Assembly: GCA_025558095.1 (NCBI GenBank)
Contig: JAIVFI010000029.1
Span: 372,001-436,000, forward strand
Direction: 5' to 3'
Length of the DNA: 64,000 bases
From: Hyaloraphidium curvatum SAG 235-1
Lineage: Eukaryota; Fungi; Monoblepharomycota
In this document: in pieces, positions 14,409 through 19,550 of the stretch
How positions within the stretch are numbered: the stretch's first letter is position 1
Layout: the number at the start of each line of letters is the position of its first letter
The notes under the pieces: model-generated
What the model was told of the DNA's origin: nothing
Databases searched by the model: none
Seen by the model: only the letters and a program-made list of their open reading frames with translations
Translations under genes and position numbers: made by a program

Positions 14409-16628
14409 ATGGCGCCGTTCGGGCGGCTGCTGGCCTTCGCGGTCCTCGCGGCGGCGGCGCTGTTTTTCGCGTGGGCGCGCTTCGGCGACTCGGCCGTCGA
14501 CCGGACGCGCACGCGGCTCAGCGACGCGCTGCGGACCACAGAGGACGCGGCTCGCGCGGGGGGCGACTCGCCGGACGACGATGGGGACCGGACAGATGCC
14601 GCGGCCGGCGATGGGAGCGGCGACGGGGCGCCCGCACAGTGCCCGGAGTGCCCGCCGCCGCCTCCGCCCCCGCCGTGCCCGCCGCCCGCCGCTCCAAACG
14701 CGACCGCTCCCCCCCAACAACCACCGGAGCAGCGTGCAGAGGCACCGCTGGACGTGCTCGTCGACCACTACCTGCACAAGACGGGCCCGCCCTACTCCTC
14801 GTCGAAGAACACGTTCGAGTACGACGACGCGCCGCCCGTGTCGCCGTGGTGGGAGTACGCACAGGCGCGGACAGAGTTCCCCAACTGCGACCGCGTCGGC
14901 CTGCGCGCCAACGACGCCGCCGGCCAGGGCGAGGAGGAGGACTGGGAGCAGCCGCGCCGCGCCGAGATCGAGCGGCGCCGCGCCGCAAACGAGCCCATGC
15001 CGTTCCGCGGCAACGACGACACCATGCTGCCCAACCTGTACGACGTGTTCATGTGGCACAACGAGCTCGACTTTCTGGAGGTCCGCCTCAACGAGCTCGA
15101 GCCCGTGGTCAACGGGTTCGCCGTCGCCGACGCCAATCTCACCTTCACCCTCCGACCCAAGACCTCCCTCCTCACCCCCGCGCTCCTCACCGACCCGCGC
15201 TTCTCCTCCTTTGCCGACCGCATCGTGCACCTCTCCCTGGACATCTCCAACGTCTCCTCGGACGACACGTGGGAGCGCGAACGCCACACCCGCCGCGAAT
15301 CCCTCCGCAGCGCCGTGGAACGCTTCCGCCCCCTCCCCGGCGACCTCTTCATCACCGGCGACGGCGACGAATTCGTCCGCTCCTCCACCCTGAACCGCCT
15401 ACGCCGCTGCAAGGGCTGGAAGTCCCCGCGCACCCTGCGCTCCTCCTTCTTCTACTTCTCCTTCGAATCCCGCGCCGACTTCGACTGGCCCGGCCCCTCC
15501 CTGCACCGCCACCCCGCGCTGCCCCCCTGGCCCGACGGCGAGAGCATGCGCGTGGGCGTGGACCGCTCCCCCGCCGGCGAGCGCGCGGCGGGGTGGCACT
15601 GCTCGTGGTGCCTGGGCTCCGTGGCCGCGCTGGCGGACAAGATGCGGAGCTATTCGCACACGGAGCACGATACACCGCATTTCACGGACCCCAGGCACAT
15701 CGTCTCGTCCATCCTGCTGCGGAGGGATCCGTTCGACAGGGACGGGCACAACTACCTCCCCCTGCGCGTGCCCGTCGACGCCTCGGACGCCCGCGGGGCC
15801 GACGAGAGGCTGGTCGACATGCCGTCGTACCTCGCGCTCAGGAGGCCGCCGCACCTGGTGCACTTCTGGGACCGGTGGGCGTGGGCGCGCAACGAGGGGT
15901 ACGACCCGGCGGAGATCGTGAGGAGCGACCACGGGGAGTTTGCAGAGTTCGAGAGGGGGGAGAAGGAGCGGGAGCGGAGGGAGGATGCGGAGAGGAGGGC
16001 GGCGGAGGAGAAGGATAAGAGGGAGAAGGAGGAGGCGGAGAAGGCGGCCAAGGCGGGCGAGGAGCGCGGTGGGGGGGAGGGGGGGAAGGAGGGCGGGGAG
16101 GCGGACGGCGCAAAGGAGGAGGAGGCGCCGCAGGACGGGGCGGAGGCGGGTCACGTGGACGTTGCGCCGCCGGTCGACGACGGGAAGCCGGCGGAGGAGG
16201 GGCCGGTGGACGCAGTTGCCGGCGACGGGCGAGGTGAAGGGGGCGGCGACGAGGCACCCGAACACGGCGATCGGGCAGAGGACGGCGATCGGAGGGACGA
16301 GCGGACGCCGGAGGACGGAGATGCGGGCGCGGACGCGGAAGGTGCTCAGCAGGAGGGCGCGCCTCGGCCGGCGGGAGACAAGGACGCGGAGGACGAGGCG
16401 GCGTCGACGGCGGCGGCGGAGGCGTTGGCGTCGACCGCGGCGATCGCGGCCAAGACGGCCGCGGTGGCTCCGACAGCCTTCGCGAGAACGCGCCCGCGGG
16501 GACTGTCGCGGGCAACGGGGTCGGGGATCGTCGGCAAGACGAGCCCGTCTGGCACGCAGAAGGTGCGGCCAAAGAGGACTGCGGTCGCCGGGAAGGCGAG
16601 CAAGAAGAGCACGATACCAACCGCGTAA
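14409..16628 (+). CDS. GT17 (MGAT3-like beta-1,4-GlcNAc transferase) family protein with acidic tail
   Basis: LYDVFMWHNELDFLEVRLNEL, ANLTFT..PK, DLFITGDGDE, FFYFSF, AGWHCSWC, KMRSYSHTE. Confidence 0.9.
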   Translation: MAPFGRLLAFAVLAAAALFFAWARFGDSAVDRTRTRLSDALRTTEDAARAGGDSPDDDGDRTDAAAGDGSGDGAPAQCPECPPPPPPPPCPPPAAPNATAPPQQPPEQRAEAPLDVLVDHYLHKTGPPYSSSKNTFEYDDAPPVSPWWEYAQARTEFPNCDRVGLRANDAAGQGEEEDWEQPRRAEIERRRAANEPMPFRGNDDTMLPNLYDVFMWHNELDFLEVRLNELEPVVNGFAVADANLTFTLRPKTSLLTPALLTDPRFSSFADRIVHLSLDISNVSSDDTWERERHTRRESLRSAVERFRPLPGDLFITGDGDEFVRSSTLNRLRRCKGWKSPRTLRSSFFYFSFESRADFDWPGPSLHRHPALPPWPDGESMRVGVDRSPAGERAAGWHCSWCLGSVAALADKMRSYSHTEHDTPHFTDPRHIVSSILLRRDPFDRDGHNYLPLRVPVDASDARGADERLVDMPSYLALRRPPHLVHFWDRWAWARNEGYDPAEIVRSDHGEFAEFERGEKERERREDAERRAAEEKDKREKEEAEKAAKAGEERGGGEGGKEGGEADGAKEEEAPQDGAEAGHVDVAPPVDDGKPAEEGPVDAVAGDGRGEGGGDEAPEHGDRAEDGDRRDERTPEDGDAGADAEGAQQEGAPRPAGDKDAEDEAASTAAAEALASTAAIAAKTAAVAPTAFARTRPRGLSRATGSGIVGKTSPSGTQKVRPKRTAVAGKASKKSTIPTA

Positions 16629-16707
16629 CGGTATACCATCAATTACATCATCAATCAATCACTGCATTCCATTGCTTTCCCGACGGCAGCTCGGTGGACG
16701 GCGTCGG

Positions 16708-16798
16708 CGCGCGCGGCGCTCAGGGGTTCGGCACCGCCGGGCCCCGGGAGCTCCGTCCCGCAGCTTTGGCCCGGCGCGCTTCATGCGGCGCCACGCGC
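16708..16798 (-). promoter_or_regulatory. SECIS element (type II) in the 3' UTR of the AhpC/PRXL2C-like gene
   Basis: Minus strand reads CGCGTGGCGC-CGC-ATGAA-GCGCGCCGGGCC-AAA-GCTG-CGGGA-CGGAGC-TCCCG-G-GGCCCGGCGGTGC-CGAA-CCCCTGA-GCGCCGCGCG. This gives helix I, an AUGA/GA core, a 12-bp helix II, unpaired AAA and an apical mini-stem. Confidence 0.9.
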
Positions 16799-16825
16799 TG
16801 CCTCAGCCGTCCACCGCGCCCCGCC

Positions 16826-17751
16826 CTACTTCCTGCTCCCGCGGTGCGCCTCGGCCGCGGCCTGCTCCTCGGGCGTCATCTCGTCCCACCACTTGAAGAC
16901 GCCGGCCTCCTTCCAGTCCTTGATCCCCACGGCCTCGAGGAGCACCGGAATCGGCGCATGATCCGCGTTGAACCTGCCGCCCCGTCAGCCTCTTCCCGAC
17001 CGCGCGCGCGCCTCGCCCACCTGTCAAAGTGCACGAACGAGCACTCCCTCTTCCCCGGCCCCAGCACAAACGCCCCGCCCTGCTGCCTCGGATCCCCCTG
17101 CACCCCCTCCGTCACCCCCTTGAAGAACCCCAACGCCCACGCCGCCGGCACGGTCGTCCTCACGTGCCGCGAGGCAACCTTCCACTCGAGCTTGCTGTCG
17201 AAGACGAAGTTGAAGTCCAGCGCCTTGTACAGCTCGCGGGACGGGTCCGAGTACATGGGGAGGGAGAAGCCGGTGGAGGCGACGAACTTGCGAACGGCCC
17301 ATGCAGGGGCGGGGGTGACGACGATCTGTGGTCCGACGAGAGTGGTGGAGCGGCTGCGGGAGGCGAATCGCGGCAGAGAACCCACGATGGAGACGTGCCG
17401 CTCCCTCAGGATTACTTTGTCGACCCGGTCGAGGTCGAGAAAGTAATCCCTGGTGGGTGGCGAGAGGGCCAGCCGAACCAGAACAATGGGGAAGGAGAAG
17501 ACACCCCGTCAGCGCCCTCCCATCGCCCCGATTTCCGCCCATTCCCACCGGCACACGTATCACAGGAGATTCCGACCGAAGATTACGATCGATTTCACGC
17601 CGGGTTTGGTGTAGAGGTTGCCGAAACGGACCGGTGCGCCGGAGGGCTGTCCGTCCGCGCTCGGCTCCCCCGCGAACGGGTCGATGAGGGGGAGGTCCTC
17701 GACCTGCTCGAAAGGGAAGAGGGAGGGGTCGGAGAATTGGTGGCTCGCCAT
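16826..17751 (-). CDS. Selenoprotein: peroxiredoxin-like 2C/AAED1-type (AhpC-TSA) thioredoxin-fold protein with UxxC
   Basis: Exons 17751-17549, 17449-17386, 17325-17021 and 16973-16826. Spliced product: IVIFGRNLL(TGA 17562-17560)YVCRDYFLDL...YSDPSRELYKALDF...GDPRQQGGAFVLGPG..FVHFDRFNADH. SECIS lies downstream. Confidence 0.88.
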
Positions 17752-17870: not shown

Positions 17871-19550
17871 ATGGATGCCGCTGCCGCGCTCCCGCAGGCC
17901 TTCTGGTGCGAGTTCCGCGCACACAAACTGTTCTTGACTGCCTCGAGCGAGAAGTTCGCCACCATGTTCTCGTCTGGCATGAAGGAGGCGCGTAGCAGCG
18001 TCGACGAGCCGGTCACGCTACTGGATGTGACTGCTCGCGACGTCACACTCTTCCTAAAGTGGGCATACGAGCGAGCGCTACCGTCTGATCTCGACGCTCT
18101 CGTTGGTCTCCGCCGAATTGGACACATGTGGATGGCGCAGGCCCTGGAAGTGGCCTGCACGCGCGAAATCATGCGCCAGCTCGCGGTACCGTCCATCACT
18201 CCGTCGCTTGAGATACTGTTGTCCCTGGAAGCCCTGTACGACGCGAGTATTCTGTCGGAGGATTGCATCTGGGAATATGTGACGAGATGGGCTGCATGCA
18301 ACGTGCAGGGGACATTCAATTCGCCAAAGTGGCCGAAGCTTGGAGGCCATGCAATTACCACGCTGATGCGGCAGCATCATCTATTCGCTCTTGACGTTCC
18401 AACCCACGCTCTAAAGGCTATTGCTTGCTGGGTGGCCGGGATTCCGTACGATATGTCGAAGCCTTCGTTCGTCATAAGGCAGGGCCAACCCCTGCCACCA
18501 GAGCTCTCTGCTTTGATCACCGCTGGTGGCACTGAATTCGACGTCCTCGAAAGCCGTCGCACCATTGCGCGTGCTGCTCTTCAGCGCGACATGGTTCCGC
18601 TTCTTTGCCAACTTGACTACACAGACATGGCGGCGTTTCTGGCTGCACCACGGTTGCTGGACGACAACTTGATCAGGAATCTGCTCGTGTCGAAGCTGAC
18701 GAGCGCCGCAGACCCCTCCTCCAGTCAAGAGAAGTTGTATCGGTGTGTTCTTGTCGATCATCGAAGTTTGCTTGCCAACACAAACTCTGGAATCGATTAC
18801 TCGGAGCTAGTCATGGAAACGAGTGCGGGGAAGCGCACGTCTCTCCGTTTCTCAGACCAAAAGGCCGGCGATAGGCTCTACTCCCAGGATTGGTCACCTT
18901 TGGAACGTGCACTAGTCGGCTCCTTGTGTCAGCCTTGCTTCATTCCAGGCAGAGGTGGGAACACTATCACCCGCCACCTTCTGGCGCGCGCTGTCCTGGA
19001 GAGGCCGGGAATCCTCTGCTTTGGCATCGTTTTGCGCGCTTTGCATCCTCAATCCAATAGCCTAAGGCCGGATGACGCTATCTTGGCTGTCTTCTTTGGA
19101 CAGGACGGTAGACCTGGCATTGTCATGATGTGCGATCCCAAATCCAGGTCGAGCGTGGTGCTCACCGATGTTGAGGGCGCCTGGAAAAAGGACTTGTTTC
19201 TTGCTTCGTCTGTCTTGCCTTCTCCTCCACAAACACCCCGTGCTGCACGTTCGGCAGGGACGAACGTGCAAGGTGCTACTGCTCCTTGGGATGCGAGCAA
19301 CAAGGAGAGGATGTGTTCCTCACCAGGGGACGTGATTGAGTGGCTGGTGCATGTCCCCGGCGACGGAACGTTGGGAGCTATTGTCAAACTGAACTACAAC
19401 GGGAAGCTTGCATTCAGTGGGACGGTTATGGTTGCTAATGGACGCACACAGGATGTTCAACTGATCTTGACTCGTTTGACCACGAACCTCAAACAACCCC
19501 CTCCCGTTGGGCAGCTGCGCTTTGTGGAAGCAGAAGCGTACCGTACCTGA
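17871..19550 (+). CDS. BTB/POZ (BACK-like) domain protein, intronless
   Basis: EFRAHKLFLTASSEKFATMFSSGMKEA..VTLLDV...FLKWAY; the first BTB strand appears to be missing. Confidence 0.75.
   Translation: MDAAAALPQAFWCEFRAHKLFLTASSEKFATMFSSGMKEARSSVDEPVTLLDVTARDVTLFLKWAYERALPSDLDALVGLRRIGHMWMAQALEVACTREIMRQLAVPSITPSLEILLSLEALYDASILSEDCIWEYVTRWAACNVQGTFNSPKWPKLGGHAITTLMRQHHLFALDVPTHALKAIACWVAGIPYDMSKPSFVIRQGQPLPPELSALITAGGTEFDVLESRRTIARAALQRDMVPLLCQLDYTDMAAFLAAPRLLDDNLIRNLLVSKLTSAADPSSSQEKLYRCVLVDHRSLLANTNSGIDYSELVMETSAGKRTSLRFSDQKAGDRLYSQDWSPLERALVGSLCQPCFIPGRGGNTITRHLLARAVLERPGILCFGIVLRALHPQSNSLRPDDAILAVFFGQDGRPGIVMMCDPKSRSSVVLTDVEGAWKKDLFLASSVLPSPPQTPRAARSAGTNVQGATAPWDASNKERMCSSPGDVIEWLVHVPGDGTLGAIVKLNYNGKLAFSGTVMVANGRTQDVQLILTRLTTNLKQPPPVGQLRFVEAEAYRT

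What the first reader, a model, noticed from the sequence alone, without database searches (positions are those of the whole stretch)
16708..17751. Hidden fungal selenoprotein: PRXL2C/AAED1-like AhpC with UGA-Sec (UxxC) and a SECIS
Seen in sequence: the ORF that stops at 17560 does so at a TGA followed by TAC GTG TGC CG|GT. Splicing three ordinary introns gives RNLL-U-YV-C-RDYFLDL...YSDPSRELY...GDPRQQGG.FVLGPG, ending at TAG 16826. A full type II SECIS starts about 30 nt after that stop. Established: PRXL2C/AAED1 proteins have RHFLCxxC at this position. Most fungi lack selenocysteine, but some early-branching fungi (e.g. Gonapodya) have been reported to use it, including AhpC-type proteins. 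Inference: this organism recodes UGA as Sec, and automatic annotation would truncate or mis-splice this gene.
Basis: partly seen in the sequence, partly recalled or inferred. Interest (0 to 1): 0.92.

Follow-up and report, generated by a model that had tools for sequence, protein, structure and literature searches.

The report
Mis-annotated fungal PRXL2C-like selenoprotein gene
This is very probably a real selenoprotein gene of the early-branching fungus Hyaloraphidium curvatum, a thioredoxin-fold redox enzyme whose first active-site cysteine is replaced by UGA-encoded selenocysteine; the public annotation splices that active site away, but the family is already known as a selenoprotein, also in the related fungus Gonapodya prolifera.

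Summary
Confirmed. The minus strand holds a four-exon gene (17751-16826, 239 codons) with an in-frame TGA at 17562-17560, in RNLL-U-YV-C-R. Spliced RNA contigs show all three introns and keep the TGA exonic and unchanged. The TGA aligns to the first Cys of the vertebrate PRXL2C CxxC. It is conserved in Gonapodya prolifera, Gonapodya sp. JEL0774, Synchytrium microbalum and four environmental relatives, 7 of 8 3' regions carrying a SECIS-like core. A canonical SECIS descriptor hits once in the 64 kb window, 41 nt after this stop. The genome is Hyaloraphidium curvatum and encodes tRNA-Sec, SecS, Sec-SPS, PSTK, eEFSec and SBP2. The public protein KAI9010704.1 uses a false donor and lacks U-Y-V-C-R. 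Weak points: Rfam misses this SECIS, RNA cover over it is thin, and Sec insertion is not shown at protein level. It is a new member of the known eukaryotic AhpC-like selenoprotein family, already reported in G. prolifera, and not a true peroxiredoxin AhpC. The scan had already noted other selenoprotein genes elsewhere in this genome.

The parts
17549..17751 (-). Exon 1 (203 nt): start codon, N-terminal strands, RNLL-U-YV-C
   Evidence: 50% identical to the same stretch of the G. prolifera locus; aligns to PRXL2C up to RHFL
17560..17562 (-). In-frame UGA, codon 64, inferred selenocysteine (first position of UxxC)
   Evidence: exonic and unchanged in RNA contigs; TGA in all relatives examined; aligns to Cys of PRXL2C
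17450..17548 (-). Intron 1, GT-AG, 99 nt
   Evidence: skip of 99 nt in run X1, depth 2043 against 84 for the unspliced contig; same position in both Gonapodya loci
17386..17449 (-). Exon 2 (64 nt), helix after the redox box
   Evidence: 52-67% identical to relatives
17326..17385 (-). Intron 2, GT-AG, 60 nt
   Evidence: skip of 60 nt in run X1
17021..17325 (-). Exon 3 (305 nt), AhpC-TSA_2 core with GDPRQQGG
   Evidence: Pfam PF13911 E = 6e-16; 65-80% identical to its three closest relatives, two Gonapodya and one sequencing-run contig
16974..17020 (-). Intron 3, GT-AG, 47 nt, CTGAC branch motif
16826..16973 (-). Exon 4 coding part (148 nt), ends at TAG
   Evidence: 61-71% identical to close relatives
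16708..16797 (-). Type II SECIS in the short gap between this gene and the convergent glycosyltransferase gene
17558..17563 (-). False splice donor (GTGATA, overlapping the TGA) that accounts for the public gene model
   Evidence: P0044 reads RNLL-DYF, five residues short; the 114-nt skip is not among the joints in RNA contigs

Best explanation
A four-exon gene of Hyaloraphidium curvatum for a 239-residue thioredoxin-fold oxidoreductase of the PRXL2C/AAED1-related (AhpC-like) family. Shown: gene structure, transcription and splicing, exonic UGA, SECIS-like hairpin, full Sec machinery in the genome, conservation of the UGA. Inferred from established eukaryotic Sec biology: SBP2 binds the tandem G.A core of the 3' UTR SECIS and eEFSec delivers Sec-tRNA(Sec), so UGA 64 is read as selenocysteine while other UGAs stay stops. 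Inferred chemistry: Sec64 is the attacking nucleophile of a U-x-x-C box at the start of the helix after the first core strand; it reduces a peroxide, endoperoxide or disulfide, forms a selenenylsulfide with Cys67 and is re-reduced by the thioredoxin system, by analogy with PRXL2B. The substrate is not known.
For: Spliced contigs confirm the three introns and show no other letters at the TGA. TGA at the same column in G. prolifera, Gonapodya sp. JEL0774, S. microbalum and four environmental relatives, Cys there in vertebrate PRXL2C. Coding conservation on both sides of the TGA. SECIS unique in the window; SECIS-like cores within 160 nt of the stop in 7 of 8 loci, with shuffle frequencies of 0-3.5% each and compensatory changes in the first pairs of helix II. 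tRNA-Sec 78 bits, anticodon TCA; SecS; SPS with its own TGA and SECIS; PSTK; eEFSec; SBP2. Neighbouring ORFs end at TGA, so there is no general recoding. Best structural match is human PRXL2B, whose first CXXC Cys is placed at the peroxide of its substrate (PMC12938796).
Against: No protein-level evidence of Sec. The deep RNA contig stops at 16833, and only a thin contig (depth 69, 16430-16770) covers part of the SECIS, so its presence in this mRNA is not shown directly. Rfam misses the SECIS, the fold z-score is -0.88, the leave-one-out model gives E = 0.14. PSTK and SBP2 were identified from exon pieces below family cut-offs. My SECIS rules were written after seeing the sequences. The substrate is an analogy only.
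Confidence: 0.95

Rival explanations
1. The public annotation is right: an intron from the GTGATA donor at 17563 removes the TGA, giving a 234-residue protein without a redox box.
For: The donor is in frame (114 nt) and the record KAI9010704.1 exists.
Against: RNA contigs show only the 99-nt skip; the three real donors are all GTGGG; the removed residues are conserved and match the CxxC of PRXL2C; relatives are annotated around the TGA in different ways, as expected of artefacts.
Confidence: 0.015
2. A transcribed pseudogene or relic: the UGA is a true premature stop and the SECIS no longer works.
For: No protein evidence; thin RNA cover over the SECIS; weak covariance-model scores.
Against: The same TGA is kept in all relatives examined, with conserved downstream coding sequence; machinery genes are present; transcript contigs are deep.
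Confidence: 0.02
3. The UGA is read as another residue (Cys or Trp) by general recoding, leaky readthrough or A-to-I editing.
For: Such mechanisms exist in other eukaryotes (own knowledge); contigs drop rare variants.
Against: Neighbouring ORFs end at TGA; the Sec-type tRNA has the TCA anticodon; no variant letters in contigs; a SECIS is present and the homologous residue is a redox Cys.
Confidence: 0.015

Closest known systems
Gonapodya prolifera AhpC selenoprotein genes (Mariotti et al., bioRxiv 10.1101/314781)
   Same: Likely ortholog: RNLL-U-YV-C-R with TGA, intron 1 at the same place, 65% identity in exon 3. The G. prolifera locus L015 has a SECIS without the apical adenines, as that paper describes for its AhpC genes. 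That L015 is one of those genes is my inference; the figures were not readable.
   Different: Different genus; canonical apical AAA and a long type II apical part; two more introns; mis-spliced rather than truncated in the public annotation.
Eukaryotic AhpC-like selenoproteins of choanoflagellates, sponges and Emiliania (PMC3753652)
   Same: Thioredoxin fold, UxxC box with CxxC in vertebrates, 3' UTR SECIS.
   Different: Belongs to a fungal and environmental-eukaryote group with RNLL-U that separates from metazoan PRXL2C at 100/100 support in an unrooted tree; the published members were not aligned here.
Vertebrate PRXL2C/AAED1
   Same: PF13911; RHFLCxxC aligns to RNLLUxxC; shared Y-x-D-P and QGDP-x-QQGG motifs.
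   Different: Cys instead of Sec; about 33-37% identity in exon 3.
Human PRXL2B, prostamide/prostaglandin F synthase (PDB 9USA)
   Same: Best structural match (E = 1.6e-8); CXXC box at the same place.
   Different: Paralog at about 22% identity; its substrate PGH2 is not known in this fungus.
True peroxiredoxins (bacterial AhpC, Prx1, BCP/PrxQ)
   Same: Same fold.
   Different: No PxxxT/SxxC motif, no AhpC family hit in NCBIfam, 8-16% identity.

Membership tests
Eukaryotic selenoprotein | In-frame UGA that is exonic in the mRNA | tested here: met
Eukaryotic selenoprotein | UGA aligns to a redox Cys in homologs | tested here: met
   (P0023, named PRXL2C)
Eukaryotic selenoprotein | UGA conserved in orthologs | tested here: met
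   seven distinct relatives, all TGA
Eukaryotic selenoprotein | SECIS downstream of the stop (AUGA/GA core, helix II, apical AA) | tested here: met
   Rfam negative, own model only E = 0.14 (101)
Eukaryotic selenoprotein | SECIS lies inside the mature mRNA | tested here: inconclusive
   deep contig ends at 16833, before the stop codon; only a thin contig covers part of the hairpin
Eukaryotic selenoprotein | Sec machinery in the genome (tRNA-Sec, SecS, SPS, PSTK, eEFSec, SBP2) | tested here: met
   PSTK and SBP2 from exon pieces
Eukaryotic selenoprotein | Selenium found in the protein | not testable with these tools
   needs 75Se or mass spectrometry
AhpC-like / PRXL2C-related (PF13911) | AhpC-TSA_2 domain above cut-off | tested here: met
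   59 bits against cut-off 27 on exon 3
AhpC-like / PRXL2C-related (PF13911) | Thioredoxin fold with U/CxxC after the first core strand | tested here: met
   model of P0044, pLDDT 86: strand 53-58, helix from 63; fold matches. The model lacks the five active-site residues.
AhpC-like / PRXL2C-related (PF13911) | Closer to PRXL2C than to PRXL2A/B | tested here: inconclusive
   all named vertebrate hits are PRXL2C and PRXL2B scores only E = 0.03, but no rooted tree with PRXL2A/B was built
True peroxiredoxin (AhpC/Prx1, BCP) | PxxxT/SxxC peroxidatic motif | tested here: not met
   sequence reads RNLLUYVC; motif definition from own knowledge
True peroxiredoxin (AhpC/Prx1, BCP) | Match to curated AhpC/Prx models | tested here: not met
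   NCBIfam gives only NF040769 below cut-off; PF00578 15 bits against 26; both scans used P0044, which lacks the active-site residues
SelenoU / PRXL2A type | RRPG-U/C-xx-C-REEA box | tested here: not met
   this gene has RNLL-U; three other genes of the genome carry the RRPG box; motif assignment from own knowledge

The most novel reading that the evidence does not exclude
Beyond the single gene: H. curvatum carries a fungal selenoproteome larger than the seven families in the published list I could read, mostly with canonical SECIS elements, and the Sec form of this PRXL2C-like enzyme extends to Synchytrium microbalum. That would make this fungus a practical system for a direct demonstration of Sec insertion in a fungus and for finding the function of the Sec form of a poorly characterised human gene family.
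Probability: 0.5. Interest if true: 0.55.

Novelty: new member of a known kind. Interest (0 to 1): 0.36.

Why it matters
It corrects a public gene model that deletes the whole active site, adds transcript support for an exonic UGA in a fungal selenoprotein gene (the fungal reports I read rest on genome searches), and shows that the Sec form of this family is kept across Monoblepharidomycota and in Synchytrium. The canonical SECIS makes it a good test gene for Sec insertion in fungi. It overturns nothing: Sec use in early-diverging fungi and the AhpC-like selenoprotein family are both published.

Tried and rejected
Rfam scan of the region and RF00031 across the genome: this SECIS not found. Fold z-score: not significant. 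MAFFT alignments of SECIS elements: poor, not used as evidence. A two-sequence covariance model did not single the element out; the seven-sequence model ranks it first but weakly, finds only 2 of the 9 related loci and does not list it in the genome-wide search, which scored 150 candidates. Exons 1, 2 and 4 alone give no Pfam hit. TIGR00475 top hits were IF2, EF-Tu, EF1A, eRF3 and eIF5B types; eEFSec was found with PF21208. Papers naming Hyaloraphidium with selenoproteins: only Amses et al. 2022, whose figure and supplement could not be read; the journal version of Mariotti et al. is not held. The SBP2 search gave no information on S. microbalum. An in-frame N-terminal extension was excluded by an upstream stop. 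Searches used exon borders one base off, corrected.

Full report
Observation. On the minus strand an ATG at 17751 (gccgccATGG) opens 63 codons that end at TGA 17562-17560, followed by TAC GTG TGC CG and a GT donor. Four exons (17751-17549, 17449-17386, 17325-17021, 16973-16826) have compatible phases, total 720 nt and end at TAG; the introns are GT-AG, of 99, 60 and 47 nt, all starting GTGGG. The tree and the structure model used P0044, the database's own record of this gene, which lacks five active-site residues.

Transcripts. Run X1 holds spliced contigs with skips of 99, 60 and 47 nt at these places, at depths of about 1900-2040, against 84 for the contig that retains intron 1. The intron 1 joint has 28 letters on its shorter side, which reaches past the TGA, and two further contigs cover the TGA without other letters. 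The alternative 114-nt intron that would remove the TGA is not among the joints. Contigs show presence, not level, and drop rare forms; X1 may also be the source isolate. The deep contig ends at 16833, just before the stop codon, and the SECIS is covered only partly and thinly. I take this as a technical drop at a GC-rich hairpin (inference), so inclusion of the SECIS in the mRNA is not shown.

Organism and annotation. Exon 3 is 100% identical to KAI9010704.1 (DFJ74DRAFT_710939) of Hyaloraphidium curvatum.

Protein family. Exon 3 matches PF13911 AhpC-TSA_2 at E = 6e-16. The named vertebrate hits are all PRXL2C, and tblastn of buffalo PRXL2C against the window puts RHFL-C-YI-C-K on RNLL-stop-YV-C-R. 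The model of P0044 (pLDDT 86) has a thioredoxin fold with the gap at the start of the helix after the first core strand; its best match is human PRXL2B, then BCP and other peroxiredoxins. It lacks the PxxxT/SxxC motif and matches no curated AhpC model, so 'AhpC' is a family label here, not membership of the true peroxiredoxins.

Conservation. The same column is TGA in G. prolifera, Gonapodya sp. JEL0774, S. microbalum, a sequencing-run contig and three other environmental relatives. Their database proteins start after the TGA or splice round it. These sequences form one group, 100/100, apart from metazoan PRXL2C (midpoint root for drawing only, no claim on direction).

SECIS. Helix I begins 28 nt after the stop; the AUGA core lies 41 nt after it, followed by a 12-bp helix II, unpaired AAA, an apical mini-stem and the 3' GA. 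A canonical descriptor finds it as the only hit in 128 kb; shuffles give 0.2 loose and 0 strict hits. Seven of eight 3' regions (this gene and seven relatives) have such a core within 160 nt of the stop, with shuffle frequencies of 0-3.5% and none on the antisense strand; the first two pairs of helix II are intact in all seven, with G-C, C-G and A-U forms. These rules were written after seeing the sequences. Independent models are weaker: Rfam misses it and a model from seven other SECIS-like elements of this genome ranks it first in the window at E = 0.14, paying for the long apical part.

Machinery. The genome has tRNA-Sec (78 bits, anticodon TCA), SecS, SPS with KG-TGA-GCK and a canonical SECIS, PSTK, eEFSec and SBP2 (two exon pieces whose best PDB hit is SBP2). 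Two neighbouring ORFs end at TGA, so recoding is site-specific.

Mechanism. Shown: structure, splicing, exonic UGA, hairpin, machinery, conservation. Inferred from established eukaryotic Sec biology: SECIS-, SBP2- and eEFSec-dependent insertion of Sec at codon 64 (about 95%). Inferred by analogy with PRXL2B, whose first CXXC cysteine is placed at the endoperoxide of its substrate (PMC12938796): Sec64 attacks a peroxide or disulfide, Cys67 resolves it, and the thioredoxin system recycles the enzyme (about 75% for this chemistry; substrate open). Rivals (public splice form, relic, other recoding) total about 5%.

Comparison with what is known. AhpC-like UxxC selenoproteins are described in choanoflagellates, sponges and Emiliania (PMC3753652). 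Mariotti et al. reported Sec machinery in early fungi and AhpC selenoprotein genes in G. prolifera, two with SECIS elements lacking the apical adenines (10.1101/314781), which fits locus L015. Amses et al. 2022 report Sec in 11 early-diverging fungal genomes and include Hyaloraphidium in their data set; whether it is among the 11 I could not read (PMC9457484). I found no paper describing this gene, in a library that lacks most subscription journals. Earlier notes of this scan list other selenoprotein genes elsewhere in this genome; they are unchecked AI notes and were not used as support.

Verdict. Real, well supported, and a new member of a known kind. Interest 0.36: a clean annotation fix with transcript support and a wider range for the Sec form, but neither the family nor Sec use in this fungal lineage is new.

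Noticed in passing
G000 C20:265954, C23:427627, C27:502613 (loci L023, L024, L025): The three other AhpC-TSA_2 hits in the genome all have an in-frame TGA in RRPG-U-xx-C-REEA (PRXL2A/SelenoU-like) and a SECIS-like 3' element.
   Followed up: partly
L038 (G000 C30:527668-527729 and upstream): The best Rfam SECIS_1 hit (36 bits) lies behind a PRXL2A-like gene that seems to have Cys, not Sec, in its box (RRAG-C-CL-C-REDA after splicing): a possible fossil SECIS or a missed UGA.
   Followed up: partly
L039, L040, L041, L042 (G000 C3:1.123 Mb, C3:598 kb, C41:19 kb, C22:279 kb): Upstream of other SECIS_1 hits lie deiodinase-like, SelenoK-like, SelenoW-like and SelenoH-like genes, judged by eye from translations. 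SelenoK and SelenoW types are not in the 2018 fungal list.
   Followed up: partly
L033:1495-2797 (G000 C31:198 kb): The SBP2 L7Ae domain runs on in frame into ankyrin repeats; the public record is named only 'ankyrin repeat-containing domain protein', and a metagenomic relative shares the arrangement.
   Followed up: partly
L016 (Synchytrium microbalum GCA_006535985.1): The ortholog has RNLL-TGA-LVCR and a SECIS-like element 34 nt after the stop; its Sec machinery was not checked.
   Followed up: partly
window 18031-18081: A spliced 51-nt GT-AG intron on the minus strand lies inside the plus-strand BTB ORF (17871-19550), in a 4169-nt contig that also holds exon 1: an antisense, long 5' UTR or read-through transcript.
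   Followed up: no
window 17871-19550: BTB/POZ ORF of 559 codons without a break, in a stretch of about 57% GC between flanks of 64-69%; it starts about 120 nt from this gene's ATG, head to head.
   Followed up: no
L005/L006 (G000 C2:991909): SPS is itself a selenoprotein gene here, with a canonical SECIS.
   Followed up: yes
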